Assembly: GCF_963676685.1 (NCBI RefSeq)
Contig: NC_092348.1
Coordinates: 496,001 to 560,000 of the forward strand
Direction of reading: 5' to 3'
Origin: Mytilus edulis
Lineage: Eukaryota
DNA length: 64,000 bases
A program made the translations under genes and the position numbers. The notes under the pieces were generated by a model, which made no database searches, was not told where the DNA came from, and saw nothing but the letters and a program-made list of their open reading frames with translations. Positions within the stretch are counted from its first letter, which is position 1, and each line of letters starts with the position of its first letter. This document shows, piece after piece, positions 29,125-54,900 of the stretch.

Positions 29125-32100
29125 TTATTGAGAACAGACGACACATGTAATTGGTGTGTCCTGTTTGTATGGAGGACAGTATAGTGAACCACATTTAGCC
29201 AGGGTTGTGTAAAACAAGTAGCCATCTTGATTTGAGGTTCCACCTGGTAGATATTCTGGACTGTTGTCCATACAAACATACATAGAAGCTGCAGCATGAT
29301 CTGGTCGTCCTCCAGCAAGAAAACCATGATATTCCATTTTCCATCCAGGATAGCAAGTATTTCTGCCTGGTATCATGATACTGGCTGTGGTTTGTTTGGC
29401 TCTGCACACACTGCATGGTACATTTTTGTTGTGTTCGTCCTTGAAATATCCTTCATACTCTGCTCCATAGATGTTAGCATAATTCGAGTCATTGGTTCGT
29501 TGTAAGGTTGCAATGTTTGGATCCTCTGGTAGACATACAGGGTTTGCCGCTGACCCACTGTGAGCATACCAGGCTCCAGCAGCATAACCTATTAATAAAT
29601 TAATTTTCTGAAATCTTTGACAAAATGAGATGCTGAATAATGTCTAAAACTTTGAAGAACAATGTATTTGTCTTTGAATAATAGTCTTTAAAAATCATAA
29701 TTGTCCAGCAAATAAACATTCATTATTCAATTTTGCTTTGATGATTATGCCAGTCTGTTCTAATTTTGACCCCCCAAGGGTGAATGAGGAAATGAAATAT
29801 GGTCACTTGGTCTTCTCCTGACTGGCAGTAAATGCCTGCCGATGTGGGGCATCTGTTTGGCTGTGTGTAATGTTTCAAGTTCGCAGTCTCGTCCGGTCAG
29901 AATGGGGACATTAAATCAGATGCCTGGTGTAAAGAGAAAAAATTTTCTATCCCTATCCAATATACCCTCGTTTTCCAGTGGCAGTTCAAATTTCCCCGAC
30001 CATCATCCAAAATAGCCTCTATTATGACAAGACCTACCTATTGTAGTTATTGTTAACTTGTTCTCGACCTGAACATGCATGAAATATTTGCCACTGGACG
30101 TTAAACAACCAACAATCTAATTTTGACCTGTACACCATTTTGATTGTTAATTGACCTTTAAAAAAATCATATATTGCATTACTTGGAGTGATATACTAGT
30201 ATATTATTGTGTTATTTCTTTCATTTTTGTTTAGCCTTCGACTTTAGTCGAAAAAGCGAGACATAGCGATCCTACATGCCGTCGGTGTTGTCATCGGCAG
30301 CGTCCACAAATATTCACTCTGTGGTTAAAGATTTTGAAATTTTAATAACTTTCTTGAAATATCCTGGATTTCTACCAAACTTGGAAAGAAGCTTGTTTAT
30401 GTTCATAAGATAGTATCCAGGAGAAAATTTTGTAAAAATAAAATTCCATTTTTCAGCAATTCTGTATTTTATTGTCGAGCCTGCAACTTTTGTTGCAGAA
30501 AGCTCGACATAGGGATAGTGATCCGGCGGACTTCTTAAAAGCTTTATATTTTAGAAGGTAGAAGACCTGGATGCTTCATACTTTTTATATGGATGCCTCA
30601 TGTTACGAACTTTCCGTCAGTCACATGTCCAATGTCCTTGACCTCCTTTTCATGGTTCAGTGACTACTGAAAAAAAAGTTAAGATTTTTTGTAATGTTAA
30701 ATTCTCTCTTATTATAAGTAATTGGATAACTATATTTGGTATGTGCGTACCTTGCAAGGTACTCATGCCCGTCAGACAGTTTTCACTTGACCTCGACCTC
30801 ATTTCATGGATCAGTGAACAAGGTTAAGTTTTGGTGGTCAAGTCCATATCTCAGATGCTATAAGCAATAGGTTTAGTATATTGGGTGTATGGAAGGACTA
30901 TAAGGTGTACATGTCCAACTGGCATGTGTCATCTGACCTTGACCTCATTTTCATGGTTCAGTGGTTATAGTTCAGTTTTTGTGTTTTGGTCTTTTTTTCT
31001 TATACTATATGCAATAGGTCTACTATATTTGGTGTATGGAATGATTGTAAGGTGTACATGTCTAGCTGACAGGTGTCATCTGACCTTGACCTCATTTTCA
31101 TGGTTCAGTGGTCAAAGTTAAGTTTTTGAGTTTTGGTCTATATTTCTAATACTTTATGCATTAGTCAACTATATTTGGTGTATGGAAATATTTTATGATT
31201 TATATGTCTGTTACACAGGTTTTATTTGACCTTGACCTCATTTTCACGATCCATTGCTTAGTGTTAAGTGTTTGTGTTTTGGTCTGTTTTTCTTCATTTT
31301 TAAGCAATAAGTCAACTATATTTGTTGTATTGAAGAATTGTTAGCTGTACATGTCTGCCTGGCATGGTTCATCTGACCTTTACCTCATTTCATGGTTCAT
31401 TGATAAATGTTTTGTTTTCTTTGGTTATTGTTGAGTTTATGTGACAGTTGTAATAAAGCTTTATATTTAGGTCTATCAACATAATATCAATGATTAGTAA
31501 AGAAGGCGAGACATTTCAGCGTGTGCACTCTTGTTTATAAATGGACTTAGTTTTTCTGCCAGGAACCATTACATTCACTCTGTGGATAAAGTTTTTTTTC
31601 CGTATTTTACTTTTAAATGGACTTAGTTTTTCTTCCAGTTAACATTACATACAGTCTGCAGTTAAAGTTTTTAAAACATTTTTAAGATTCTTAAACTAGC
31701 CTGGATTTTTACATAACTTGGACAGAAGCTTTTGACAATCAAAAGATAGTATCAAGAGGAATAATGTTATTGATTTTTTTCATCATTTTTGTTGAGTGTG
31801 TGATTAACGGCAAAAGTAGGCGAGACACTGGGTTCTGCGGAACCCTTACAAATTTTTTATTAGTTTATTTTGGCCAATTTTGTGACATTTATTAGAATTT
31901 TCTACCCTTATTTTTTTAACAGATGTACCCGGTAAAGTTATTCAAATATAAAGCATGCACTTGTTCATTGGGTGTCACAAAAACAAGGTAACTTTGTACC
32001 TTAACCCTCTCAATTGTATGATAGATGATAAGAAAGACCAGTTAAAGCAGGCACGGATCCAGAGGGGGGGTTCCGGGGGTTGGAACCCCCCCTTTTTTTT

Positions 32101-34586
32101 GGACGATCAATGCATTTGAATGGGGACATATAATTGGAACCCCCCCTTTGTCCTGGGTTAGGAACCCCCCTTTTTTAAAATGGCTGGATCCGCCCCTGTA
32201 AAGGCTATGTAATGGATTATGATTTATGGTATTGTGAGTGATATATAGGATGCCAGATTATTCAGAATGTAACTGACATATCTTACCTCTGTACACTATT
32301 TCTGTGTTATTATGACTACATTGTTTTCGTCCCCACCTGACATATGAGGAACCAAAATCTAAAATTCAAAAATAGAAATGTAAGTGATATTGCTGCAATA
32401 ATTTCTATGCAACCATAATTTTTAGCTCACCTGGCCCATAGGGAATTCAACTTTATGTATTTTCACATAGGGTCCAAAATTAAACTTCAATTGATTTCAT
32501 CAAAATTTGAATGCTTGGGTTTCTTGAATTTGCTGAATCTAACCGTGTATTTAGATTTTGGATATTGGACCATAATAGCCAAAAAGTCCAATTTCAATTT
32601 GTAAAGTACATCCATTCTGCACCAGAAACCAATAATGTATCAAATATTTAATCACAATGCAAATTCAGAGCTGTATCAAGCTTTAATGTAGTGTCCATAC
32701 TGTCTCTAAATGTTCTGGGTTCGACCTCTTCGGTCGTATCAAGCTGCGCACAGCAGAGTATTTTATCTATTATACAACACGATGCAACCGAATATGAACA
32801 TCGATTAATATTTCGAAAGGGTATCTACGTCATATGGATTTATGAAATTTGGTTTCAGGGTTATATATAAGCAAACTGTACAATGTGATGTGATTTCAGA
32901 TTTATCACCCAACAACTTCTTGTTAACTGAACACTTTTTACACATTTGACTTATATAATAGTTCTTGAAAAACTGGTCATTATCGTGATATATAGACTGC
33001 CCACAGGACAGTGGTATTGACTAAGATAGTGATAATGACTGAGCCGAAGGCGAGGTCATTATCGCTGTCGCAGTCAATACCAATGCCCTACAGGCAGTCC
33101 ATGTATCATGATAATGACCAGTTTTTCAAGAACTATTATGTTTATTTCATTGAGAAACCATGTTTTGAAAATTGTCATAAATTCAAAATGCCTACAGCGA
33201 ACTCGAGTAGTTGTACGATTTCTATGGCAAAGAGTGAGGACCAGTCGTAGTAATACTGCCATTCATTTTAGTGCAATTTTTCAGTATATAAATACTTATT
33301 AATCAAGTTATCTTCAATTTTATAATTAACGAAAACATATAATAAACAATTCAACAACTTAAATATAATCATATATTAAAAACAGGAACATGTTTTATAA
33401 ACGTTACATCTCTCTAAAAAGAGAAACCACGCCCCACTGGTCATTAACAGAGAAACGACGCCCCAACAGTCATTATCAGACAGAAACCACACCCCAACGG
33501 TCATTATCAGACGGAAACCATGCCCCACCAGTCATTATCATGTAAAAGTTGTTAACGACCGGTTTTCTGGTCCATTTTTTTCTGTTAATGACCGATGGAA
33601 TTTATTACTGAAGAATAATGAATGTCATGTGACCCCTTTTAATCCAATAAGAGAATCTTATTCTCAACCGATATGAAATAAACTACGATACAAGTAGATT
33701 TCTGAAATTTGGTTTCTTCAGGGTTTATATAAGCCATCTATACCATGTCATAGGCTAATCAAGGAGGGGGCTGGGGTCTGGGTCCCCCCTTTCGTGGGAA
33801 AAAATTGGTTGATTATATACAGAATCACAGAAGAATGACTGGAGCGGGCCCCCTTATGAAAAGTTCTGGATCTGCTACTGTTTGTGATCTGTTTTCAGAT
33901 TCACCAAGCAACAAGTCACTATTTATTAAAGTATTTGGGCGGCAGTGTACTCAACATGCATTCATTGATACATTTCTAACACGATCAGCTTCTAAATATT
34001 TAGAAAAACACCTTGTCAAAATGTCAAACTTTGTCAAACTGTACATGCCAAAACACCCAACAAACAAAATTGTTTTCCATTAATCTGCTAAACTTCCAAA
34101 TATCATAAGTACACTTTCAATCCTTTATTACGCTTATCAACGAATCATCCATCACTAGCTACAAGACTTACTTTGATCAGACTGTAGCCACCACTAGCTA
34201 TAAGACTTACTTTGAGCAGACTGTAGCCACTACTAGCCATAAAACTTACTTTGAGAAGACTGTAGCCACCACTAGCTATAAAACTTACTTTTAGCAGACT
34301 GTAGCCATCACTAGCCATAAAACTTACTTTGAGCAGACTGTAGCCACTACTAGCCATAAAACTTACTTTGAGAAGACTGTAGCAGCTGTACCGATGTTGT
34401 TAATGTTTGTATTTGTTGAGATGTTGTGGTCGTTATCGCGTCAAGACGAGCAGACAAGTCTTGAATCTTTTTTTCAAGTTGATTAACAACATCTCCATCA
34501 TTCAGAAGCAAGCGTTTATCCTTCAGAGTACACTCTGAATTAGAAAGAAATCCAAGGTGAAAAAGATAAACCCAAAGTAGAAACAT
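29125..34586 (-). CDS. Secreted 'short-chain collagen C4-like' family protein (signal peptide, coiled coil, Cys-rich C-terminal domain), about 251 aa
   Basis: Exons 34586-34367 (MFLLWVYLFHLGFLSNSEC, KRLLLND, coiled coil), 32358-32287 (SYVRWGRKQC), 29588-29125 (GYAAGAWY..G.AANPVCLP..P, IYGAEYE, VPCSVC, MIPGRNTCYPGWKMEYHGFL, YVCMD, CGSLYCPPY, ITCVVCSQ-stop). Both introns are phase 1, GT-AG. Confidence 0.88.
29795..30120 (+). mobile_element. SINE-like repeat
   Basis: GGGGACATTAAATCAGATGCC central segment and GAAATATTTGCCACTGGACGTTAAACAACCAACAATC 3' end with a short-repeat tail. Confidence 0.45.
30230..31855 (-). mobile_element. Nested Helentron/DINE-like elements (inner element about 30468-31535)
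   Basis: Two terminal hairpins (TTCGACT..AGTCGAA and GTCGAGC..GCTCGAC), shared GCGAGACA subterminal motif, inner TGACCTTGACCTCATTTTCATGG repeats. Confidence 0.6.
32048..32198 (+). mobile_element. MITE, hAT5-like
   Basis: Same TIR family; perfect 5-bp TSD TAAAG. Confidence 0.85.
33749..33880 (-). mobile_element. MITE, hAT5-like, degenerate
   Basis: Reverse-complement homology to 35056-35202. Confidence 0.7.
34148..34384 (-). repeat. 39-bp tandem array made of an exon 3' end plus its splice donor
   Basis: Six copies of GCTACAGTCT(T/G)(C/A)T(C/A)AAA|GTAAGT..; the first is the real donor at 34366. Confidence 0.92.
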
Positions 34587-35055: not shown

Positions 35056-35202
35056 CAGTGGCGGATCCAGAAATTTTCATAAGTGGGGGCCCACTGACTG
35101 ACCTAAGAGGGGGCCCGCTCCAGTCACGCTTCAGTGATTCCCTATATAAGCAACCAATTTTTCCCCCCAAAAGCCCCCCCCCCCCCCCTAAATCCGCCTA
35201 TG
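35056..35202 (+). mobile_element. MITE, hAT5-like
   Basis: TIR CAGTGGCGGAT/ATCCGCCTATG; TSD GCATT. Confidence 0.85.
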
Positions 35203-37308: not shown

Positions 37309-38500
37309 GGTAATATTTTAATGAATTGCACTGGATGGCAGCAATGTCTATTCGATGGTATTCATAATTTTTTTTATCCATATACACTGCCTTTGAACTT
37401 TGACAGAGTATGATGCTACAGGAACAAACTCCTGATCTCTCAGTTGTGGCAGGCGGGGGAAATATGTGATCATCAGATCACCTCTCTAGTTTTGGTTTTT
37501 GTTAAATCAGTTAAATCAGTTCCGATTATGAAAGTATAACTTAAACTGGTCCGATCGCTGACTCGAATAAAAAATATAAAGCCCTGCGGGTCATTAGTCC
37601 CTTGCTTGATTCCAACCTCTAATAAGACGCTAGTTTACCAACTAAGATGACTGCAACATGTAATTTATTAAACAGCTTGGATACTGATTTATAAATCCGT
37701 TGTAACATTTTTGAACAAAAAAATGTCCTTATATAACTGACCTTTTTCGTCTTTGATTGTATGTTTAACACTGAAGCTAACCTGACACTTCTACACATAT
37801 ATATGTAAAGCAATTGGATATTTAACACAATCTATAGGTTAACAAATCGTAACAATACGAACAAATGAAATGGGATAAAAGTCTAGGAGATAACAATTAT
37901 CTATTTATTTCTATCTTTTCATAGATAAATGTCAAGGCACAAATAAAAAGGTATTTTTACTGTTAACGATTAACAAGACGATTAGTACATTTTGATTAAC
38001 AACCCACTACTTCATGATACTAAACGTATAAAACAAGGACAAGACGTGGTCCAGCTACAGGCACTAAAGGCTTCTGAATTATATAGATTATTTGTTTATG
38101 AATATCAATGGGACAACTATCAATTGAGATCTCCATATAAACGATATTTGCCAATACAACACAACTGCCTACCAAACTTCATTGAAATTATCATAAAATT
38201 ATACACTTGTATCCAAACTGAGCAAATTCATTTATTAGTATTACTGCTGTTGATACAATTGTTTCATACTAGTACAAGTAAATCCTTTTTATATGAAATG
38301 TCTTACCAAGAAAAGAAATACGTGCATGTATGATATTTATTCTTCATTTTGCAATAGTATAAGTGTATTATATTAGTCCTGAGACCATCTATCTTTCTAC
38401 CTTCAACTTTTGGCACTAAGTCACAACTTTGACCATTACAAGCTAGATCTAACAAAAAGTGCACATTTAAAACCTGTAAAACATTTTGTACAATCAAGTG

Positions 38501-39715
38501 TTAAAGCTTTTTACAGACATAGTATTGGAAAACACCGTCCCATTTAGCGTCTCCTCCAATACACTGCAGCACTTCAAGTCCTTCGTCCATCAATAAGTCG
38601 GCAGACGACACTAAAACAGGAGTATGTCCAAAAATTATAAGATGGCCACCTTTCTTCAACACACGGACAAGAGGGTGAACCATTACACGTGCATCGGAGG
38701 CTTTCATCACTTCGGAATTAATAAATCTTACAAATACAACATCAGCGATATCGTCTGTAATTTTCGGTTCGGCGGCGTTACCATGGTGAACTTCGTCTAA
38801 TCGTTTTCCTGCAAACAGTGTCATCTGGTAGCTGAGGTCTTGTCCAGCTGTGTAACTATTTGGGAATGCCTCTTTCATGGTAGCCAAAAACTGACCAGTT
38901 GAACAGGCAGGATCATACAAGAACAAGTCTTCTTTTCCCAAAGTTTTTAAAAATTTAATTGAAAAATCTCTAAGAAAAACTTCACCTTCCCCAAGCTGAA
39001 GAGCTAATGTTTCATCTATTTCCCATCCTTCATCGGGACAATGGATTTCAGTTTTATATTCCGTCTGCAAGGCAGGGAAAGGAAAAACTAACTCCATTTC
39101 CTGTAAATAGTTGTGAACTATGTCGTGCATGATAGTTTTCTTCTCAGATCCTGTTAATTGTCGATATAATACAACAACACCATCGTCTTGTATCCTAAGA
39201 TCTACAAAAACTCCAAGAAGCATGCTAGCACGAATATGACTACAGTGTAATTCACGGATCTTGTTTGTAATCCATTGATGTGAAAGAATTCGTCTTCCCA
39301 CTATAACACGTAGAGATCCATCTTCCATTTTCCAAGATTTCAAAAGAAATATACTTTGAGGTAGTTCATCCCATCGTTCGGAATACCTCGTAGGCCTGCG
39401 CTCACTTACGGTATTCCAATTTACAGCTTCGTGACGTTCAACGGAATCATCTATATGTCTTTCTTGATACAAATCAATTTCTTTCAGAATCATTCGTAAA
39501 TTTCTATTATCATGTTTGTCCGTCACTTCTGATATTAAAACTTTTAGCGCATCCTTTGCATTTTGCCATTTTCCTTCAGAAACTAATTTCTGTGCTGCGT
39601 ACAGACGTTCTCTGATCAGCTTGTTATTGACGTCACGGAAAACACCGTCAAAATTAAACGTGTCATGTCCATCTGTTGCCGTGGGCAGGGAACCACTTCG
39701 TTTCATGTCACTCAT
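38501..39715 (-). CDS. Intronless class I SAM-dependent transferase, isonocardicin synthase (Nat)-like putative 3-amino-3-carboxypropyl transferase, 404 aa
   Basis: Clean non-repetitive 1215-nt ORF. SAM motif I LYDPACSTGQFL, post-I GQDLS, DVVFVRFIN, LKKGGHLIIFGHTPVL, terminal FQYYVCKK, and upstream GRRILS/ELHCSHIRAS motifs, which I recall from Nat-family proteins. Minus-strand AATAAA at 38341-38336. The ORF and SAM fold are well supported; the Nat assignment is from memory. Confidence 0.85.
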   Translation of the reverse strand: MSDMKRSGSLPTATDGHDTFNFDGVFRDVNNKLIRERLYAAQKLVSEGKWQNAKDALKVLISEVTDKHDNRNLRMILKEIDLYQERHIDDSVERHEAVNWNTVSERRPTRYSERWDELPQSIFLLKSWKMEDGSLRVIVGRRILSHQWITNKIRELHCSHIRASMLLGVFVDLRIQDDGVVVLYRQLTGSEKKTIMHDIVHNYLQEMELVFPFPALQTEYKTEIHCPDEGWEIDETLALQLGEGEVFLRDFSIKFLKTLGKEDLFLYDPACSTGQFLATMKEAFPNSYTAGQDLSYQMTLFAGKRLDEVHHGNAAEPKITDDIADVVFVRFINSEVMKASDARVMVHPLVRVLKKGGHLIIFGHTPVLVSSADLLMDEGLEVLQCIGGDAKWDGVFQYYVCKKL

Positions 39716-39992
39716 TTTGCTCGCTGCTTCTCAAAATGTTTTTCTTAGTAAGTCGTCTCAGTATAGATACAATTAAACGTGTCACTAAGTGGTAAATATA
39801 TTACACGTACATCCTTAAAATGTTTAGGTAACCAGTCCAGATTGTACTTACTGAGGGAAGAGATTAGATAATTCTTATTATCATCTGACATGTCCAGAAT
39901 ATCGCTCCAAAGGTCATAACCTGTAAATAAAAACGTTTGATAGTTATCTCTATACATTAATGTTACTGTTCTTAGTATGCATTTTACCCTAG

Positions 39993-40145
39993 CAGTGGCA
40001 GATCCAGAAAGTTTTATAAGTGGGGGCCCACCGACTGCCTTAGAGGGGGCCCGTTCCGGTCATCCTTCGGTGATTCCATTTATAATCAACCAAATGTTTC
40101 CCAGAAAAAGGGGGGCTAGCCCCTCTACCCCTAAATCCGCCTCTA
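39993..40145 (+). mobile_element. MITE, hAT5-like, about 280 bp upstream of the Nat-like gene
   Basis: Same family; flanks CCTAG/TCTAG. Confidence 0.8.
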
Positions 40146-41504
40146 TCTAGTTATACTGTGGAGACTGTAGTTTAGACGCTTACAAATATAGGTTATATCA
40201 AAACCCAAAAGACCAAATCCGGAATTTTGTATTTTGATTTTTTTCTTGTTAATTTTATTAAGATGAAGAATAAAAAAAAATACACGAGCTATATTGTCTG
40301 CTACTTTTTAAGCTGCTGGTGTTTACTATATGGGTGGTTTTTGTTCATTTCTTCGTTGTTGAAGGCCTTAATATGAACCAATGCTACTGAAAAAGAGTCA
40401 AGAGACACCAACGGGACAATTAAATTCAGGTGTCGAAATCAAACTGACAATAAAATAGGAAATAAATGAAAAACGAAGAAAAAATTACACAACAATATAC
40501 CAAAAATATCGTAGAAAAACTAAGGACTTAGCAATAATAAGTTTTACCGCGTGATCCTTTGGTCTGTCGTGGAAGTTTGTATCATTTGCAATCATACCAA
40601 ATATTCTTTTTTTTTTATTAAGGTAGGTAACATTTCTTTTTATTTTACTAATTTTTTTTAATCTTGAGTATATGGGGTCAAACGTCATAATGAATGAAAT
40701 GAATAAACTGTTATGACAAATAATATGAGAGTTTTATTTGTCTTTAACATTTTATTCATTTCATTAAGTATGACGTGCGTTTATGATTGTGTTTCCATGG
40801 CTTAAAATTATTTATACAGGCAATATTAGATGTAAAACATGTACCTTCAAACAATTTTGTTAGTCAGCCCAAAATTAATGTCTTTTCATGGCTTCATGGT
40901 ATAGGGCTTAGTTATACAAAGCAACAGTTACCACCTCTTTTGGTAGAAACGAGTTCCAGGACCTCTGTACAAGTGGTATATAGCTGGTGACTCAAGAACA
41001 AAATTGTAAATTTAAAATGACAATACTTTGTTTTCTTAGAAAACTATTAGTTTGAGGCTTAATCTTAATACCCAGTGGCAAACATTACATCACGGTAAAT
41101 GATAAATGAATATACCCTATACTCTGTACTAGATAGAAACACCGAGTTGGATTTTAACTTACTAACCATGATACTATATCGCCTTACTCTGGTACACTGT
41201 TCCGATTCTGGGCAGTTATATGTATATATGAAAAATAAGATGTGGTAATATTGCAAATGAGACAACTCTCCACAAGATACCAAAATGACACAGAAATTAA
41301 CAACTTATATATATTGTATTTTCTGTTTAAATTAAAAAAAAAAGTTTCAAATCTCGAAACGTTACTATAATTTAAAATATTGACTTATCACGAGTAAAAA
41401 ACCCGTAAAAATGACAAACTTTTAAGAATTAACCCGTTGAAATTCCGGCTTATGAAAAGTCGAAATTTCACTGTCAGAGAGTTTAATAAAAGCAGACATA
41501 TAAT

Positions 41505-42293: not shown

Positions 42294-43229
42294 AATTGTA
42301 TTATATGTCTCTGATAAAAGTAAAAAATGCCAGTTAAAAGTCCAAATTTTAAAGATTTTAAAGTTTCGTTTAAATATTATATAATAAGATAAGATTTATT
42401 TTTATTAAAGTGTCACCATCCATTACAATAAGTAAAAATATTTGACTATGAATAATTAAAGAGTTTATTTTCCATGTCCCTAATATGCTTCCGTGTGTAT
42501 ATAATTACAAGTAGATCAATTAAGTGAAAAGAATTACAAAAAATGAAACAGACTATAAAACATTGACTATTAAAAGGCGATATAAACAAATTATTAAATG
42601 TATTGGCAACGAAACAGAAGTGGTCAATAATTCATTTGAATTTGAATACAATCATTAAGTACACTGTTTGGGTCGATATTTAAACTTTGGTATTGTCCGA
42701 CTTAATACTTTTTATACGAATTGATATGTCTGTCTGTACTATACCGTCCGATTTAATGACTGCAATTAAGCCGTCTGTCCATGTCTTACTGTCTGTTTTC
42801 TTCTATTCGATTCAATAATATGACAGTTGGTACATTTGAATATGCATCTCATTAAGACGGTATAATTAACTGTAATGCCTTTGTTTTTCGTTTATTTTTT
42901 GTATTTAATTAGGCCGTTAGTTTTCTCGAGTCGTTTGAAACGTTTTACATTTGTCATTTCGGGGCCTTTTCAAAATAGCTTACTATGCGGTATGGACTTC
43001 AAGTTGCCCGTTGTTGAAGGCCGTACGGTGACCTATTGTTGTATTAAATTGCTGTGTCATTCTGTTTCTTGTGGAGAGTTGTCTCATTGCCAATCATACC
43101 ACATCTTCTTTTTTTTTATATTATATACACATCCTTGCTTCAGCTCAGTGGTCACGGTAATTAGGTGTGGTATAAATATGAATTATAGCAAACCTTTCTT
43201 AAATTACCAGTTTATAAAAAGAAAATATA

Positions 43230-45010
43230 ATCGTTCCACGTCCTCGATGGCTTTCAAATCTTGCATGGCTTTCAAATATTCGGTTATAGACGTTCCACGT
43301 TCTTGCATGGCTTTCAAATATTCGGCTATGATCGTTCCGCGTCCTTGCACGGCTTTCAAATATTCGGCTATGGTCGTTCCACGTCCTTGCATGGCTTTCA
43401 AATATTCGGCTATGGTTGTTCCACGTCCTTGCATGGCTTTCAAATATTCGGCTATGGTCGTTCCACGTCCTTACACGGCTTTCAAATATTCGGCTATGGT
43501 CGTTCCATGTACTTGCACGGATTTCAAATATTCGGCTATGATCGTTCCACGTTCTTGCATGGCTTTCAAATATTCGGCTATGGTCGTTCCACGTTCTTGC
43601 ATGGCTTTCAAATATTCGGCTATGGTCGTTCCACGTTCTTGCATGGCTTTCAAATATTCGGCTATGGTCGTTCCACGTTCTTGCATGGCTTTCAAATATT
43701 CGGCTATGGTCGTTCCACGTCCTTACACGGCTTTCAAATATTCGGCTATGGTCGTTCCACGTCCTTGCATGGCTTTCAAATATTCGGCTATGGTCGTTCC
43801 ACGTCCTTGCATGGCTTTCAAATATTCGGCTATGGTCGTTCCACGTTCTTGCATGGCTTTCAAATATTCGGCTATGGTCGTTCCACGTTCTTGCATGGCT
43901 TTCAAATATTCGGCTATGGTCGTTCCACGTCCTTTCATGGCTTTCAAATATTCGGCTATGGTCGTTCCACGTCCTTGCATGGCTTTCAAATATTCGGCTA
44001 TGGTCGTTCCACGTTCTTGCATGGCTTTCAAATATTCGGCTATGGTCGTTCCACGTTCTTGCATGGCTTTCAAATATTCGGCTATGGTCGTTTCACGTTC
44101 TTGCATGGCTTTCAAATATTCGGCTATGGTCGTTCCACGTTCTTGCATGGCTTTCAAATATTCGGCTTTGGTCGTTCCACGTCCTTGCATGGCTTTCAAA
44201 TATTCGGCTATAGACGTTCCACGTCCTTGCATGGCTTTCAAATATTCGGCTATGATCGTTCCGCGTCCTTGCACGGCTTTCAAATATTCGGCTATGGTCG
44301 TTCCACGTCCTTGCATGGCTTTCAAATATTCGGCTATGGTTGTTCCACGTCCTTGCATGGCTTTCAAATATTCGGCTATGGTCGTTCCACGTCCTTACAC
44401 GGCTTTCAAATATTCGGCTTTAGTCGTTCCATGTCCTTGCACGGATTTCAAATATTCGGCTATGATCGTTCCACGTTCTTGCATGGCTTTCAAATATTCG
44501 GCTATGGTCGTTCCACGTTCTTGCATGGCTTTCAAATATTCGGCTATGGTCGTTCCACGTTCTTGCATGGCTTTCAAATATTCGGCTATGGTCGTTCCAC
44601 GTTCTTGCATGGCTTTCAAATATTCGGCTATGGTCGTTCCACGTCCTTACACGGCTTTCAAATATTCGGCTATGGTCGTTCCACGTCCTTGCATGGCTTT
44701 CAAATATTCGGCTATGGTCGTTCCACGTCCTTGCATGGCTTTCAAATATTCGGCTATGGTCGTTCCACGTTCTTGCATGGCTTTCAAATATTCGGCTATG
44801 GTCGTTCCACGTTCTTGCATGGCTTTCAAATATTCGGCTATGGTCGTTCCACGTCCTTGCATGGCTTTCAAATATTCCGGCTATGGTCGTTCCACGTCCT
44901 TGCATGGCTTTCAGCTATGGTCGTTCCACGTCCTTGCATGGCTTTCAAATATTCGGCTATGGTCGTTCCACGTTCTTGCATGGCTTTCAGATATTCGTCT
45001 TTGGGCGTTC
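43230..45010. repeat. 42-bp satellite with a 924-bp higher-order duplication
   Basis: Unit CGTTCCACGT(T/C)CTTGCATGGCTTTCAAATATTCGGCTATGGT, about 42 copies; the series of variant units recurs 22 units later. Confidence 0.97.
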
Positions 45011-45046
45011 CTGGTGATGGTGAATCCAGAAACGCCCCTCGAACGC
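45005..45046 (+). ncRNA. Degenerate type I hammerhead ribozyme
   Basis: GCGUUC-CUGGUGA-UGG-UGAAU-CCA-GAAA-CGCCCCUC-GAACGC: perfect stem I, core with an A6>G change, disrupted stem III. Confidence 0.55.
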
Positions 45047-45203
45047 GTGAAATTTCTAAAGTGTTGTTTTTATTTTTAAAGCACATGTGTCAGATTTCCA
45101 TACAGTCAGCATGTTAAAACGTTTCTCTGAAATATAAAAGATAGCCATAATTAACAATAAACAGGTTAAAATTTACTGAAAGAATGCACCTTACAACAGT
45201 AAA

Positions 45204-45938: not shown

Positions 45939-48900
45939 ATGCCAGATGAAGCGTGAGTATAGTTTTGGTGATCTTCCAGATACCTTATATTTTGGTGTAC
46001 TCTATTATGGGTCTCTATTATTTGATAGTTGATTTGTTTCTGATGTGTTTGTGTTTGTGCAAAAGTGATGATGATATTTTGTATTGCAAATGGAAATTAC
46101 ATCACTGGAGACTTCAAGAATACAAAGTTGAATAACTCTGTTAATAAGCAGCTTTGGTTCCCGTAAAATAATTTGCTTTCCAATGATGAATTGGATTAAC
46201 ACAAGTTATCTCTCTTTGACATAGCAGAGATGGCACCTGTAATAAGTATGGTTGGACTAGGACTGATACACATTTTTACTAATCTTGAAAGCTTTAAAAC
46301 TTAGTTTCATTGTCATTTATTTTCACCCATTGTATAATTTCAAAAGATTATAAAAAAGGGGGGATGCAGGTACCAGTGGCGGATCCAGAAATTTTCATAA
46401 GTGTGGGCCCACTGACTGACCTAAGAGGGGGCCCGCTCCAGTCACGCTTCAGTGATTCCCTATATAAGCAACCAAATTTTTTCCCAAAAAGGGGGGGGGC
46501 CGGCCCCCCCCCCCTAAATCCTCCTCTGGGTACAAGAACAAGACAATATTTTTCCATATTAAAGGAACATTTAAATATATTTACTGAATATACTGATTAT
46601 ACTTTATACATACATTCAAAACAGATGTTTTCTTGTACCTGTTGATGCAGGTGGGTGCAATGAGACAGCAATTTGATGGTACAAAATGCATAGGCGGTTC
46701 CATGAGGGGTCCGGGTCCCCCTTTTGTGGGACAAATTTGGAAGATTACATAGAGAATCACTGAAGCATGACTGGAGTGGCCCCCTTAGGTCAGTCAGTGG
46801 GCCCCCTTAATGAGAAGTTCTGGATCCGCCACTGAAATGTCAGAAGACATTGTAATACAGGTGACTAGATATAATAAAATCACAACTCTGACAATACTGT
46901 CATTTATATGAATGAGTTTTTATTATTACAGTATCTTTGACAAAAGTCCAGATTGATTCAAGAATCATGCTACAATTAGATCATCATCAACTTCACAGTT
47001 CATTTTCTTAAGCTTTAATATAATTATATATACCATATAGGTGAAGAAACACACTGTATTCTGGTAAACATTTTAATGATAAATGATAAAAGTAATTGGT
47101 ATTATGGTGCGCTATTGTGTTTAAGTTGCATTTAACTGCTCAAGTTTTTGCTTAAATTTTCTTTGCAGTGTTGGGTCATCTTTCAGCTTCAATAATTTGG
47201 TTTTATGTTAAAAACTTCATTATGATATAGTTGTATCCTTAATGTTCACTATATCATGGGGGTCTCATTGGGGGGTTAATTCTGATCCCGGATTCCACTT
47301 ACGTTTTGACAGATTCCCGTATCCCGCTTACACAGTGAGTGTGTTACTTAAGCAATTCTCATTTTTTTGTGATTTCCCGGGTCCCGCTAGACTCCATTTC
47401 CCGTTTTCACGGCACAATAATTCGACTTTCAAGTATCACGCTTACAAAAAATCGGCAATCCCGTGTCACGCTTAGACCCCAATGAGACCCACTATCATGT
47501 ATGTCCACAGAAAGTATGTGTAGGACATTTTATTGAGGAAAGAAATCGACTCATTTTAAAATATTTTAGATTTGATAGTCATGTTAAAATTGATAATATT
47601 TTGGAACAAATTGCAAGAATATGATATTTTTTTTTTTATTGAAAAGTCAAACATGCATTGACCTAATACATGCATGACATGTACATGGATTTACAAAAAT
47701 AACATTTAGGCCTTTTAAAGAGGGGATAAACTAGTACAGTCACTAGTCATATGAAGGGATATTCATGATCTTATAGTTTAAGGAGGTTCGCGGGTATAAG
47801 ATTTTTAGAAAAAAATTAAACATTAATTTTTTATTACAGATTTTATTTATTACCTTAAGTAGTTGTTACTTTATCATGTGGTACAAAAATCAATTCATGT
47901 TGTCCCCAGCGGACTTTTAAAATGTAGATATCACTTAAAAAGCTCCAAATTATCTCCCTTTGGTGCAAAAATGCCATTTTTTGGCAATAAAATTAAAATA
48001 TCTTTTTTAACTCATCGGTGACCTATATTTTTTATTGTTGTTTTCGAATAAGCTGTACATTAACTAAATAATTGTAAAATTTTAGCGATTTCTGTAATTT
48101 AGTTCTTTTATTATTTCGATATTACCGCTTTTTCTCCTATTAGTTCAACAGAAAAAAAGGACATTAACAAAAATGTATGCTTCTTTCGAAAGCAGATTGT
48201 AAGCGTAAATGAACGGTGACCCCATTTTTTTTATTTCATTTTTCTATTATAATAAGTATAAGATAAAGTTCATTTATAGAAAAATATAGAGAAATCCTAT
48301 ATTAAATAAAAAAATCATTTAGACCTGCGAGCCCCCTTAATTCCCAACTTCAGTTACACAATAGTGAGACACTGATAGATTGTGCCATAAAAGTCAGGAA
48401 ACTTTACAATTTGATGGAAAATCTATTTCAATATTTGAACCAATATCCACCTGACTAGATCTGCAGATATTTTGTGAGATTGAGCTGTGAAATCTTTGTG
48501 TAATGTGTAGTAGAGGTTTTATAATTTTTTGTCTCTTATATTTCTCTCTTTGTATCTAAATAACAGTAAAAAGTTAATGTAGGATCTAAAGATGACAATT
48601 TTTTATGCCTTTTGTAACTTTTGATGGTCATCGTTTTTATTGCCACGCCTGCAAAGAAAGTTGAAGATTGCAAGACATTATAAGGCCAAATAAAAAAGTA
48701 TGTGTGGTTCCAGTTACATCTGAAAAAAAGTTAGGGTAGGTAGGTAGGGATTTTTTTTATTTTATGTTTTTTTTTACATTGAGTCTATGGGAGCAACATT
48801 CTGACTTTAACAGTGCTGAATGAAAAATGACAATAAAATCTTTAGGGTAAGCTATTTTTAAGCCGAACAAGTAGGGACGGTAGGGTTACTGGAACCACAC

Positions 48901-51900: not shown

Positions 51901-54900
51901 GTCACTGACTCAGACGTACTTATAAATATAATCATTTTCTGTGACTGTATATTACATTAATTTGTAGGATCCTTTACTATAGATAATTTAGCTGATCTGT
52001 AACAATAACATCTTCATGCCTTATATATCATGTACTGTAGTACGCCGCTAGATTAAAACTGACGAGAAAAGGTAACACACGGCCAGCGAAAGCTCTTTTT
52101 TTTGAGAGCCCAGGTGGTTGTGTGGTCTAACGGGACGGCTGCAGTGCAGGCGATTTGGTGTCACAATATCACAGTAGCATGGCCATGGGTTCAAATCCCG
52201 GCGAGGGAAGAACCAAAAATTTGCCAAAGCAAATTTACAGATCTAACATTGTTGGGTTGATGTTTAGACGAGTTTTATATATATATATACAGTGTAAGCA
52301 GTTAAATGAATATCATGTCAGGTTGTTGTCTCTATTTCATTCTCAATTTTATTATCAATACAATCTATGAAAATGTCAATACTGGTTAAATGAGATTTAC
52401 AATTAAACAAAGATCAGTGATTGCAGTACATGGAAAGACACATTTAAAATGACAAAATTTTAACCAGGTGAGCAATATAGGCTCTTGGGAGTCTTAGGTC
52501 TAGGGTTGCCTATGCTGTACCTTAGAAAAAAACCTTTAAACATCAGAGCTTAGATTGACTAAGGTGCCATAAACTATTTGGGGAACAAATGTGTAGGATT
52601 GTTGAATAAAATTTATTGAAAAATAAACATTAACACGTCTTAAAATTATTTTATTTATTTTTCAGATGAAGAACCAAAAAAGGTAGGATCTCATTTTAAT
52701 TGATGACCAGTTATTTTACTATTTAAACACTTATCATAAAAACACACCAGAAACAACAAATGTATAAAGTTTTATTTTATCCTGTGTGTCAACTCACTAG
52801 ATTTTGGCTGTATAAAATGGGAGGTTAATGTTATTTTCCTGGGAATATTTGGTCACATCAATGTGAAACTTGATAAGCATGTTCATTGTGATGGAAGCTG
52901 TTATAGAATGATATACACGGGCACTTGTCTCAGAAATATACATGTGATATACACAGGCACTTGTCTCAGAAATATACATGATATACACAGGCACTTGTCT
53001 CAGAAATATACATGATATACACAGGCACTTGTCTCAGAAATATACATGATATACACAGGCACTTGTCTCAGAAATATACATGATATACACAGGCACTTGT
53101 CTCAGAAATATACATGATATACACAGGCACTTGTCTCAGAAATATACATGATATACACAGGCACTTGTCTCAGAAATATACATGATATACACAGGCACTT
53201 GTCTCAGAAATATACATGATATACACAGGCACTTGTCTCAGAAATATACATGATATACACAGGCACTTGTCTCAGAAATATACATGATATACACAGGCAC
53301 TTGTCTCAGAAATTTGCTTGTCATATGTACAATACTATTTTAGAATTTATGGAATAAAATTTAAATTTACTATTTCACAATGGGGAAATTTATCCTATTT
53401 AATCTACTGACATTGTACTTTTTAATGACTATTTTATTTTGTCTATTTCAGTTTTCCTTTGATTACTCATATTGGTAAGTACAGACCTTTTTTTTTTAAA
53501 CCAGTTTAAAGTTTAACATAGATATATAGGAAAAAATACCAAACGCCAAGGAAAATTCTAAAAGGAAAGTTGGCAAAATCCAAAGTTTAAACACAGCATT
53601 AGATTAGAAAAACAACTTCCACATCATATACATGATATGTTATAATCATAGTGACCAGCAAGTCATGGTCTTAAATTGTTTAAACTAATTAAACCTGCTT
53701 GCTCAATGTCAGAAGAGTCAGTGTAAAACCTTGGTCCTCAGTGGTGGATCCAGAACTTTTCTTAATTTAGGGGGTTCCCGCTTACTGACTCAAGGAGGGG
53801 GCCCACTCCAATCATGCTTCAGTGATTCCCTATATAATCAACCAAAATTTTCCCACGAAAGGGACCCCCCTGGATCGGACTATTGTCCTTTTGGCCATAA
53901 TGAATATTATCTCATTTCACATATAAAGGCTATTTTGAGTGTTTTAAAAGCTCAATTCCTGGCTTTACTCTTTCAGAAACTTCTTCTTTAACAATATAAT
54001 CCCTCTTTTACATCACATGGATTTAAGACTTAGTGTCAAGATCAGGGAAAGAAATGTCATGCTGTGTAAAGAAATTGATAATCTAAAATTTCAAAAGAAA
54101 TATTCCTATATATATATCCTTCATTGTTATATTCATCAAGTTCATATTGTTGTAGATTAGTTTGAATCCATTAACTTCATTGGGGATTGTATCAACTATT
54201 TAGCATTTGAAGAGAAATATCATGTATTTTATTTTATTTATTACATCATTTTTTTTTGAAAGAATTGTGTAAGTGTGAAGCATGAACATGTATTAGGTCT
54301 TTGGAGAATTGTTCAATAAATGTGGTTTCTCACTTTAAAACCTAAAAGTTACGAAATAATTGCACAACACTTTGAAGTTACATTTTGGTTATAAAAATAA
54401 TTTGGATTATAAAAACATAAACGGCACTATCTATACTTTCTCTCTTCTTTTGAAGTTTAATTTTATTATAAAACTGATCAATTACCTAAAGTGTTTGTAG
54501 TTATAATTGACTTGGAGGCCTTTATACCCTTTACTGTTTGATTGAACAATATCTCTGTTAATGGTGAGTCAATATTTGTAGCCTACATACACCACATAGA
54601 GTGTGCTTACAAACTTATTATCTTGGGGGAGATCATCTCATATTCATGTTGATCTATCTGTTGACATGATTGTAAATAATTGATTAACTGGTGGCATTTT
54701 AACGTCCAGGGACAAATATTACATGCATATTATGGACCCTCTGAGTAAGATTTGTTATATGGTACCTGGTTAGGTAATACGCAACAAGAAGACAAATCTC
54801 CTTTCTCAAACAAATTCTTCTGACTCCAAGCTGGTTAGGTTTTTAAGTTCTTCCTAGTAGCAAGAATACCAATCTTAAAAAGTCTTGAGCCTTTCTAGGA

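What the first reader, a model, noticed from the sequence alone, without database searches (positions are those of the whole stretch)
38501..39715. Intronless, bacterial-type Nat-like (isonocardicin synthase) aminocarboxypropyl transferase in an animal genome
Seen: a 404-aa single-exon ORF among genes that are all split by introns, with a eukaryotic polyA signal and host repeats on both sides. Recalled knowledge: the DPACSTG SAM motif, GQDL, GHTPVL, terminal FQYY and upstream HCSHIRAS motifs resemble Nat from Nocardia nocardicin biosynthesis, which transfers the 3-amino-3-carboxypropyl group of SAM to a phenolic OH rather than methylating. Inference: a horizontally acquired, domesticated enzyme giving a mollusc an undescribed aminocarboxypropylation pathway. 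Tyrosine/DOPA-type phenolics or xenobiotics are speculative substrates.
Basis: partly seen in the sequence, partly recalled or inferred. Interest (0 to 1): 0.88.

Follow-up and report, generated by a model that had tools for sequence, protein, structure and literature searches.

The report
Unclustered paralogue of mollusc ACP-transferase
This is a real, transcribed, intron-free mussel gene of probable ancient bacterial origin, related to the nocardicin enzyme Nat; a mollusc pathway using such an enzyme was published in 2025, and this copy is an uncharacterised sister paralogue lying outside that gene cluster.

Summary
The 404-aa single-exon ORF at 38501-39715 (-) is real. It is a true homologue of isonocardicin synthase Nat by sequence (PDB 8zhu, E 6e-33) and by fold (TM 0.88-0.90). 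All family-invariant motifs are kept, and it is embedded in host DNA: interspersed repeats lie on both sides and a neuroguidin exon lies 16 kb away. Contigs from three RNA-type runs cover about 1.6 kb collinear with the genome.

The "undescribed pathway" is already published. Venugopalan & Schmidt (JACS 2025) described the mollusc bur-ox cluster (Fmt-A-T-R NRPS, ACT, P450, FMOs). They showed that Mytilus californianus ACT transfers the aminocarboxypropyl group of SAM to the phenol of N-formyl-tyrosinol, and they proposed ancient HGT.

- This genome carries bur-ox on another contig (C3, 30.19-30.28 Mb) with two ACT copies only 44% identical to the window protein.
- Trees resolve two mollusc clades: A (window gene, bivalves and gastropods) and B (bur-ox ACT, including McalACT).
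- A and B are sisters (98/100). A rotifer-like group is next, and all other relatives are bacterial.
- Clade A has no NRPS, P450 or FMO partner nearby, and I found no mention of it in the literature searched.

It is most likely an ACP transferase whose substrate is unknown.

The parts
38501..39715 (-). Single-exon CDS, 404 aa plus stop: clade-A Nat-like aminocarboxypropyl transferase paralogue
   Evidence: ORF list. phmmer to PDB 8zhu gives E 5.7e-33 over residues 155-403. AF2 model has pLDDT 91. Foldseek to 8zhv/8zhu gives TM 0.88-0.90.
38246..39847 (-). Minimum extent of the transcript (about 1.6 kb, unspliced). The strand is inferred from the ORF, because contigs do not give it.
   Evidence: Logan contigs of three runs from three studies: X3 38246-39833 as one 1588-nt contig, X1 38373-39847, X9 (recorded RNA-Seq) 38421-39847. 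There is no depth on the unique flanks and no joints.
39506..39715 (-). N-terminal extension (residues 1-70: a disordered head plus two helices), shared by mollusc clades A and B and by the rotifer-like group but absent from about 95% of bacterial homologues
   Evidence: Secondary structure of the model. Columns G24 and F26 are conserved in A and B and are gaps in 96% of bacterial rows. Bacterial ~335-aa proteins align from query residue ~75 onward.
38936..39418 (-). Beta-rich cap / substrate-side domain (residues ~100-260), with family invariants G140, G168, P212, E223, W231, E245 and R249
   Evidence: Model elements E109-E210 and H235-257. Invariant columns. This region aligns to Nat in the fold search (305 columns).
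38504..38935 (-). Rossmann-type SAM-binding core (residues 261-404)
   Evidence: Pfam Methyltransf_11/25 match at 268-361. Invariant columns include D268, C271, G274, G291, R330, N333 and H364-T365-P366; D293, Q397 and Y399 are nearly invariant (at least 90%).
38894..38914 (-). DPACSTG motif (residues 268-274), which replaces the usual GxGxG motif I
   Evidence: Translation. D, C and G are invariant in all 49 aligned homologues. The pattern [YF]DPACSTGxF retrieved 100 confirmed bacterial relatives.
38618..38629 (-). GHTP motif (residues 363-366), with H-T-P invariant across the family
   Evidence: Translation. Invariant columns. The motif aligns to GHTP of Nat.
38336..38341 (-). First AATAAA poly(A) signal, 160 nt after the stop
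   Evidence: Sequence.
38231..38236 (-). Second AATAAA poly(A) signal. The X3 contig ends just before it, at 38246.
   Evidence: Sequence; contig end.
39975..40120 (.). Host interspersed repeat about 260 bp upstream of the ATG, marking integration in the animal genome
   Evidence: 1542 first-look candidates in the genome; the 40 scored copies lie on many of the large contigs at 85-89% identity. More copies lie in the window on both sides of the gene.
35056..35172 (.). Copy of the same interspersed repeat on the 3' side of the gene
   Evidence: blastn, 84% identity over 117 bp.

Best explanation
The ORF encodes an intact, transcribed, host-integrated member of the Nat (isonocardicin synthase) family of SAM-dependent 3-amino-3-carboxypropyl (ACP) transferases.

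It belongs to a mollusc-wide clade ('clade A': bivalves plus caenogastropods). Clade A is the sister paralogue of the ACT of the published bur-ox (bursatellin/oxazinin) gene cluster ('clade B', which includes the biochemically characterised McalACT).

The common ancestor of A and B most likely came from bacteria. There, the same enzyme is often fused or adjacent to NRPS A-T-R modules. The ancestor duplicated before bivalves and gastropods diverged. Clade B stayed in the cluster, while clade A became a dispersed stand-alone gene.

Inferred mechanism, not shown here:
- The Rossmann core binds SAM with the methionine C-gamma presented to a deprotonated nucleophile, most likely a phenolic oxygen of a tyrosine-derived small molecule held by the cap domain.
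- SN2 attack releases 5'-methylthioadenosine and leaves a homoserine (ACP) ether.

The physiological substrate of clade A is unknown. I judge a substrate or role different from clade B somewhat more likely than simple redundancy.
For: Family membership:
- phmmer to 8zhu gives E 5.7e-33.
- Foldseek to 8zhv/8zhu gives E 2e-28 and TM 0.88-0.90, twenty orders of magnitude better than any methyltransferase.
- All family-invariant residues are retained in clade A. Only 6 fixed A/B differences exist, most of them conservative.

Paralogy:
- The genome has three intronless copies: the window (C5) and two on C3 at 44% identity.
- The C3 copies lie among Fmt-A-T-R NRPS ORFs, two FMO genes and a P450, which is the published bur-ox architecture.
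- No NRPS domain or bur-ox-type P450 match lies on C5, and the nearest FMO-like match on C5 is weak and about 480 kb away.
- McalACT is clade B. Its BLAST table lists 397-aa Mytilus orthologues and Tegillarca KUTeg_012996 at 57.5%. That protein is 58% identical to the C3 copies but 41% to the window protein.

Trees:
- Reduced LG+F+G4 tree (SH-aLRT/UFBoot): A 99.5/100, B 99.5/100, A+B 98/100, animals versus all bacteria 90/89.
- The same groupings appear under LG+C20 PMSF and FastTree.
- Gastropods and bivalves separate inside clade A.

Co-occurrence of A and B in one species: this genome, Mizuhopecten, Potamilus and Pinctada.

Expression: transcript-shaped contig cover in three runs, one of them recorded as RNA-Seq.

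Bacterial background: 100 confirmed loci across many phyla; A-T-R-ACT, T-TE-ACT and ACT-CmlA fusions.

Chemistry of the sister enzyme: +101 Da product on N-formyl-tyrosinol, with the phenol required (PMC11869996).
Against: - No assay exists for any clade-A protein. ACP transfer is inferred from conserved residues and from the sister clade.
- I could not obtain the Nat structure paper or model coordinates, so I could not check which residues contact the ACP moiety or the substrate.
- The near absence of fixed A/B differences gives no positive sign of a new specificity.
- Raw RNA reads of one run (X22, 6% of the run read) gave no read on the gene, and two of the three contig runs are only guessed to be RNA.
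- The tree is unrooted. In the reduced tree all animals sit on one side of a single branch, so 'nested in bacteria' depends on the root. The direction of transfer rests on taxonomic distribution.
- The donor lineage is unresolved, with bacterial backbone support of 12-35.
Confidence: 0.62

Rival explanations
1. Redundant isoenzyme. The clade-A protein acts on the same tyrosinol intermediates as the clustered ACT and simply supplies extra or tissue-specific ACT activity in trans to the bur-ox pathway.
For: All invariant residues are shared and there are only 6 fixed A/B differences. McalACT itself is promiscuous towards N-acyl tyrosinols and SNAC thioesters. A and B co-occur in the same species.
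Against: - Only 44% identity has been kept between the clades since before the bivalve-gastropod split, with both clades under long-term retention. Strict redundancy is rarely maintained for that long.
- The cluster already holds two ACT copies of its own, 73% identical to each other.
- The paper notes patellogastropod genomes with an ACT homologue but no NRPS. That would fit an NRPS-independent role if those homologues are clade A, which was not tested.
Confidence: 0.25
2. It is functionally a methyltransferase, another SAM-utilising enzyme, or a non-catalytic derivative, as the Pfam labels (Methyltransf_11/25) would suggest.
For: Pfam and NCBIfam give only generic methyltransferase hits over residues 265-364. 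No activity data exist for clade A.
Against: The Pfam hits cover only the shared Rossmann core. Whole-protein sequence and fold place it with Nat far above any methyltransferase (E 1e-28 versus 1e-8). The family-specific motifs (DPACSTG, RFxN, GHTP, FQYY) are intact. Both characterised relatives, Nat and McalACT, transfer ACP rather than methyl.
Confidence: 0.07
3. Rival on origin: the family is an old, vertically inherited eukaryotic gene lost in most lineages, or was transferred from animals to bacteria, rather than acquired from bacteria.
For: In the reduced unrooted tree all animal sequences sit on one side of a single branch, with support 90/89. A root on that branch cannot be excluded by the tree alone. 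Many hits come from unnamed Logan or ENA assemblies whose taxa are unknown.
Against: - Among named hits the only eukaryotes are molluscs and one bdelloid rotifer, against about 100 bacterial species from many phyla.
- The animal stem is short relative to the bacterial divergences, and midpoint rooting puts the root inside bacteria.
- All three animal copies and the partner NRPS are intronless.
- NRPS-ACT fusions and adjacency are widespread in bacteria.
Confidence: 0.1
4. Bacterial contamination or a chimeric assembly.
For: The coding sequence is intronless and its nearest non-animal relatives are bacterial.
Against: - A host interspersed repeat lies 260 bp from the ATG and further copies lie on both sides.
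- A neuroguidin exon lies on the same contig.
- C5 holds matches out to 82 Mb, so it is a chromosome-scale contig.
- CDS GC is 0.40 in a 0.32 window.
- The 2-kb stretch with its flanks is held by DNA-type runs of several studies and organism labels.
- Orthologues occur in many bivalve and gastropod genome assemblies.
Confidence: 0.01

Closest known systems
McalACT / bur-ox aminocarboxypropyltransferase of molluscs (Venugopalan & Schmidt, JACS 2025, PMC11869996)
   Same: Same family, same length class (397-404 aa), same animal-specific N-terminal extension and same invariant residues. Both are intronless, and the two clades are sisters in the tree (98/100).
   Different: Only about 44% identical. 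The window gene lies on a different contig, with no NRPS or bur-ox-type P450 match on C5 and only a weak FMO-like match about 480 kb away. It belongs to a separate clade that also holds gastropod sequences. It has never been assayed and is not mentioned in the paper's main text or in the parts of the supplement I searched and read.
Nat, isonocardicin synthase of Nocardia uniformis (PDB 8zhu/8zhv; UniProt Q9RAH6)
   Same: Homologous over residues 155-403 (E 5.7e-33) and same fold (TM 0.88-0.90). The DxACSTG, GQDL, GHTPVLVSS and FQxYV motifs are shared. Nat transfers the ACP group of SAM to a phenolic oxygen.
   Different: About 30-32% identity. The mollusc protein has a ~70-residue N-terminal helical extension. 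Nat's substrate, a nocardicin beta-lactam peptide, is not known from molluscs.
Bacterial NRPS-ACT fusions and neighbours (uncharacterised): A-T-R-ACT (L015, P0137, P0139), T-TE-ACT (P0138), ACT-CmlA-type beta-hydroxylase (Xenorhabdus, L010)
   Same: Same Nat-like domain at 35-38% identity. They show the same biosynthetic logic as bur-ox: activate an amino acid, reduce it, add ACP.
   Different: They are fused or operon-linked and bacterial, and lack the animal N-terminal extension. The window gene stands alone.
Other ACP transferases (nicotianamine synthase/CntL, MccD, BtaA, Tyw2, TapT/DTWD)
   Same: Same chemistry: ACP transfer from SAM with MTA release.
   Different: Reported as not homologous to NAT (review PMC10491745). 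None of them appeared in the sequence or fold searches.

Membership tests
Nat / isonocardicin synthase family (SAM: phenol 3-amino-3-carboxypropyl transferases) | Significant sequence homology to Nat across the catalytic domain | tested here: met
   phmmer E 5.7e-33, query 155-403 against chain 83-325 of 326.
Nat / isonocardicin synthase family (SAM: phenol 3-amino-3-carboxypropyl transferases) | Same three-dimensional fold, including the cap domain and not only the Rossmann core | tested here: met
   AF2 model with pLDDT 91. Foldseek to 8zhv_A gives TM 0.90 over 305 columns at E 2.6e-28, while the next folds score E 1e-8 and cover the core only.
Nat / isonocardicin synthase family (SAM: phenol 3-amino-3-carboxypropyl transferases) | Family-invariant residues and motifs (DPACSTG, GQDL, RFxN, GHTP, FQYY, W231, E245, R249) | tested here: met
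   These residues are invariant or nearly invariant in 49- and 228-row alignments and all are present in the window protein.
Nat / isonocardicin synthase family (SAM: phenol 3-amino-3-carboxypropyl transferases) | Catalysis of ACP transfer (MTA released, +101 Da product) | not testable with these tools
   Shown for Nat and for McalACT. No clade-A protein has been assayed.
bur-ox ACT orthologue group (McalACT, clade B) | Orthology with McalACT | tested here: not met
   The window protein falls in sister clade A (A 99.5/100, B 99.5/100). The linking protein KUTeg_012996 is 57.5% identical to McalACT and 58% to the C3 copies, but 41% to the window protein.
bur-ox ACT orthologue group (McalACT, clade B) | Physical clustering with the Fmt-A-T-R NRPS, FMOs and P450 | tested here: not met
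   The cluster is at C3:30.19-30.28 Mb. The window is C5:0.496-0.560 Mb. No NRPS or bur-ox-type P450 match lies on C5, and the nearest FMO-like match on C5 is weak and about 480 kb away.
Generic class-I SAM methyltransferases (Pfam Methyltransf_11/25) | Profile match above the gathering score | tested here: met
   PF08241 scores 30 bits (cut-off 21.2) and PF13649 scores 28.9 bits (cut-off 27), both on residues 268-361 only. This shows the shared Rossmann core, not methyl-transfer chemistry.
Generic class-I SAM methyltransferases (Pfam Methyltransf_11/25) | Methyl transfer (SAH released) | not testable with these tools
   Both characterised relatives transfer ACP instead.
Horizontally acquired gene of bacterial origin in an animal | Integrated in host chromosome and expressed | tested here: met
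   Flanking host repeats, a neuroguidin exon, and transcript-shaped RNA contigs.
Horizontally acquired gene of bacterial origin in an animal | Patchy eukaryotic distribution against a broad bacterial one | tested here: met
   The named eukaryotic hits are molluscs and Rotaria only. There are 100 confirmed bacterial loci across many phyla. The unnamed sister groups checked are MAGs. Caveat: many hits carry no taxon.
Horizontally acquired gene of bacterial origin in an animal | Animal clade nested inside bacterial diversity on a rooted tree | tested here: inconclusive
   Animals are nested under midpoint or Pseudomonas-clade rooting. The trees are unrooted, however, and in the reduced tree animals and bacteria are the two sides of one branch (90/89).

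The most novel reading that the evidence does not exclude
Clade-A ACT defines a second, NRPS-independent aminocarboxypropylation route in molluscs. Under this reading it is a stand-alone enzyme, retained in bivalves and gastropods since before their divergence, that puts a homoserine-ether/ACP group on a substrate other than the bur-ox tyrosinols and yields a still unknown metabolite class. It could also explain the mollusc genomes reported to carry an ACT homologue but no bur-ox NRPS.
Probability: 0.4. Interest if true: 0.65.

Novelty: new member of a known kind. Interest (0 to 1): 0.4.

Why it matters
ACP transferases are rare enzymes, and animal-encoded biosynthetic enzymes of bacterial type are rarer still. 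The headline claim, a Nat-like ACT acquired by molluscs and acting on tyrosine-type phenols, is already in the literature. As a discovery of the family, this finding is therefore not new.

What remains of value is narrower:
- Molluscs carry two anciently diverged ACT paralogues, and only the clustered one has been studied.
- The unclustered one is conserved from mussels to freshwater unionids, Dreissena and caenogastropods. It is a direct, cheap target for enzymology, since McalACT expressed solubly in E. coli, and for metabolite discovery.
- Surveys that score 'bur-ox present' by the presence of an ACT homologue need to tell the two clades apart.
- The bacterial A-T-R-ACT and ACT-beta-hydroxylase fusions suggest that bursatellin-like chemistry exists in bacteria, and they support transfer of a pre-assembled pathway.

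Tried and rejected
Tools that failed or led nowhere:
- The first read laying try was busy. The repeat worked.
- One script call was lost.
- The 'careful' PMSF tree and an 85-row UFBoot run did not finish on the single CPU. I read only the topology of the latter and obtained bootstraps from a 35-row subset instead.
- The Nat structure paper is not in the library, so active-site residues could not be taken from it.
- The search of earlier findings returned nothing for this window.

Checks that came back negative or blank:
- Pfam on ten exon-like fragments of the window gave nothing usable.
- Kinesin motifs were absent, so KIF28 is unconfirmed.
- The ESM Atlas search of the 8858-9193 fragment was blank.

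Readings rejected:
- The 734-aa ORF at 42875-45079 as a gene. It is a translated 45-bp satellite.
- Contamination.
- A second biosynthetic cluster around the window gene.
- A 5'-UTR intron at the acceptor-like site near 39851. It cannot be decided: contigs simply end at 39833-39847 without loose ends, which fits a transcription start equally well.
Full report
**Observation.** The window holds a 404-aa ATG-initiated ORF at 38501-39715 on the minus strand. It is the only long ORF in 64 kb that is not a translated repeat. The 734-aa ORF at 42875-45079 is a 45-bp satellite read in frame. The window contains no N.

**What the protein is.** Pfam and NCBIfam see only a generic methyltransferase core at residues 265-364. 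A phmmer search of PDB sequences, however, finds isonocardicin synthase (8zhu) at E 5.7e-33 over residues 155-403 and nothing else of note. An AlphaFold2 model built on a 49-sequence alignment has mean pLDDT 91. Foldseek places it on the Nat structures 8zhv/8zhu at TM 0.88-0.90 and E about 1e-28, whereas the best ordinary methyltransferases score about 1e-8 and match only the Rossmann core.

**It is already known as a kind.** A full-text search for 'isonocardicin synthase' led to Venugopalan & Schmidt, J Am Chem Soc 2025 (PMC11869996).
- They describe the bur-ox gene cluster of Mytilus and many other molluscs. It comprises an Fmt-A-T-R NRPS, an isonocardicin-synthase homologue called ACT, a bacteria-like P450 and two FMOs.
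- They show in vitro that M. californianus ACT (McalACT) transfers the aminocarboxypropyl group of SAM to the phenol of N-formyl-tyrosinol, giving a +101 Da product.
- They note that NCBI annotates such genes 'isonocardicin synthase-like'.
- They propose ancient HGT predating the split of molluscan classes.

**This gene is not that ACT.** The window is C5:496001-560000 of a 1.37-Gb assembly. A six-frame search of the genome finds three intronless copies: the window gene and two on contig C3 (30204625-30205788 and 30256664-30257809), each 44% identical to it.
- Searches with Formyl_trans_N and NAD_binding_4 locate two uninterrupted ORFs of about 1620-1640 aa at C3:30244102-30249024 and 30277601-30282460.
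- Pfam confirms the Fmt-A-T-R architecture of the one scanned, two two-exon FMO genes at 30191517-30199942, and a P450 fragment at 30262529-30263452.
- That is the published bur-ox cluster, partly duplicated, as the paper's supplement also notes for Mytilus.
- No NRPS domain or bur-ox-type P450 match lies on C5, and the nearest FMO-like match there is weak and about 480 kb away.

The supplement's BLAST table for McalACT lists 397-aa Mytilus orthologues and then Tegillarca KUTeg_012996 at 57.5%. That same protein (P0046) is 58% identical to the C3 copies, which are also 397 aa, but only 41% identical to the window protein. McalACT therefore belongs with the C3 copies. The paper's main text does not mention paralogues or a phylogeny, a search of the supplement for 'paralog' found nothing, and I found no other paper on the point.

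**Phylogeny.** Database searches returned 152 and 187 homologues, and a pattern scan of GTDB species genomes returned 100 confirmed bacterial loci.
- FastTree on 228 rows, IQ-TREE LG+C20 PMSF on 85 rows, the best LG+F+G4 topology on the same rows and a finished 35-row LG+F+G4 run all agree on the key groupings.
- Read from the unrooted newick of the 35-row run, support (SH-aLRT/UFBoot) is: clade A 99.5/100, clade B 99.5/100, A+B 98/100, rotifer-like group 100/100, all animals versus all bacteria 90/89.
- Clade A holds the window gene, Pinctada, Mizuhopecten, Mytilus coruscus (a truncated model), Dreissena, Potamilus and the gastropods Batillaria and Pomacea.
- Clade B holds the C3 copies, Sinanodonta, Tegillarca, Ylistrum and Ruditapes.
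- Inside clade A, gastropods and bivalves separate. The duplication is therefore older than the bivalve-gastropod split and inheritance since then has been vertical.
- Both paralogues occur together in this genome, Mizuhopecten, Potamilus and Pinctada.
- The next group out contains Rotaria socialis. An unnamed group that looked close in FastTree consists of metagenomic proteins, two of them from Deltaproteobacteria and Myxococcota MAGs.
- The bacterial backbone is unresolved (support 12-35), so no donor can be named.
- The trees are unrooted. 'Nested in bacteria' holds for midpoint or intrabacterial roots but is not proven. The case for bacteria-to-animal transfer rests mainly on distribution: molluscs and one rotifer against about 100 bacterial species of many phyla. 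Two further points support it: the animal copies and their NRPS partner are intronless, and the bacterial context is as described next.

**Bacterial context.** tblastn with the mussel NRPS hits A-T(-R) ORFs directly upstream of the Nat-like gene in more than 25 of the 80 bacterial loci. Pfam shows single polypeptides with A-T-R-ACT (L015, P0137, P0139) and T-TE-ACT (P0138). In Xenorhabdus khoisanae it shows an ACT fused to a CmlA-type diiron beta-hydroxylase (L010). The bur-ox logic of activating an aromatic amino acid, reducing it and adding ACP, with beta-hydroxylation, thus pre-exists in bacteria. That favours transfer of a linked set of genes, from which clade A later dispersed.

**Host integration and expression.**
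- A ~122-bp interspersed repeat lies 260 bp upstream of the ATG. The genome gave 1542 first-look candidates for it, and the 40 scored copies lie on many of the large contigs. Further copies lie on both sides of the gene in the window.
- An exon at 21925-22176 (+) matches neuroguidin.
- CDS GC is 0.40 in a 0.32 window.
- Contigs of three runs from three studies cover 38246-39833, 38373-39847 and 38421-39847. One of these runs is recorded as RNA-Seq and two are only guessed to be RNA.
- The cover shows no joints and no depth on the unique flanks, which is the shape of an unspliced ~1.6-kb transcript.
- Raw RNA reads of a fourth run (6% of the run sampled) gave none on the gene.
- AATAAA signals lie 160 and 265 nt after the stop.
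- Whether the common contig end near 39847 is a transcription start or an exon boundary, next to an acceptor-like 'cttccctcag', cannot be decided from contigs.

**Function.** All 21 columns invariant across the 49-row alignment and all 67 positions conserved in both mollusc clades are present. Only six positions are fixed differently between A and B, and most of those changes are conservative (F/Y, R/K, Q/R, R/K, A/D, M/L). The catalytic apparatus is therefore intact. By homology to Nat and McalACT, the enzyme most likely performs SN2 transfer of the ACP group of SAM to a phenolate, releasing MTA. This is an inference and was not shown here.

Nothing in the sequence identifies the substrate. 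Long-term retention of two paralogues at about 44% identity, the stand-alone position of clade A, and the reported genomes with an ACT homologue but no NRPS make a distinct substrate or role somewhat more likely than plain redundancy. McalACT's promiscuity keeps redundancy alive as a rival.

An animal-specific N-terminal extension (residues 1-70, with a conserved G24/F26 motif) is shared by clades A and B and by the rotifer-like group but is absent from about 95% of bacterial homologues. This fits a single origin of the animal genes.

**Verdict.** The family, its chemistry, its presence in molluscs and the HGT idea are already published. The specific gene is a new, uncharacterised member: a conserved, unclustered paralogue. 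Interest is moderate.

**Limits.** Large bootstrap runs did not finish.

Noticed in passing
L015:3325-6936 (+); P0137; P0139; P0138; L010:4789-7386 (+): Bacterial Nat-like domains occur fused to NRPS parts: A-T-R-ACT in one ORF (L015, P0137, P0139), T-TE-ACT (P0138), and in Xenorhabdus khoisanae ACT fused to a CmlA-type diiron beta-hydroxylase with a metallo-beta-lactamase fold (L010). In more than 25 of 80 bacterial loci an A-T(-R) ORF lies just upstream of the ACT. This suggests bursatellin-like chemistry in bacteria.
   Followed up: partly
G000:C3:30191517-30282460 (loci L084-L097): The bur-ox cluster of this genome is partly duplicated: two FMO genes, ACT, a P450-like stretch, NRPS, ACT, P450, NRPS. 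The two ACT copies are 73% identical to each other. The P450-like copy at 30209713-30210516 has four in-frame stops, so it is either a pseudogene or interrupted by an intron.
   Followed up: partly
window 42875-45079: A tandem satellite with a 45-bp unit (about 49 copies) reads open in several frames and produces false ORFs of 600-734 aa. GC is 0.43-0.46 with strong AT skew.
   Followed up: partly
window 39975-40120 (also 33784-33854, 35056-35172, 46371-46496, 53739-53860): A ~122-bp interspersed repeat gave 1542 first-look candidates genome-wide (85-89% identity among the 40 scored copies). It is strongly represented in RNA-type contigs (summed depth 50-450) and in raw RNA reads, so it is probably a transcribed SINE/MITE-like element.
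   Followed up: partly
window 41187-41300: Another repeat has very high depth in all RNA-type runs (summed contig depth up to about 6000) and many loose ends. Its identity was not examined.
   Followed up: no
window 18742-22176 (+): Neuroguidin (NGDN) gene split by introns. The exon at 21925-22176 matches human NGDN residues 181-221 (E 4e-8). Fragments at 18742-18966 and 20909-21028 look like further exons but gave no database hit.
   Followed up: partly
window 29128-29643 (-): A 172-aa open frame with good codon score. The ESM Atlas places it with mollusc and other eukaryotic 'hypothetical proteins', some carrying a collagen C4 domain (score 0.97). It is probably an exon of an ordinary host gene 9 kb downstream of the ACT.
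   Followed up: partly
window 8858-9193 (-): An exon-like 112-aa frame rich in Pro and Ser with a PPxY-like motif. It had no Pfam or Atlas hit.
   Followed up: no
G000:C5:1014190-1017270 (+): Weak FMO-like exons (up to 63 bits) lie about 480 kb from the window gene. That is too far and too weak to call a cluster, but they are the nearest oxidase-type match on the contig.
   Followed up: no
P0017 (Mytilus coruscus, 253 aa) versus window residues 1-266: The public M. coruscus gene model for the clade-A orthologue is truncated to the N-terminal two thirds (83% identical to the window protein). The paralogue is therefore easy to miss in annotation-based surveys.
   Followed up: no
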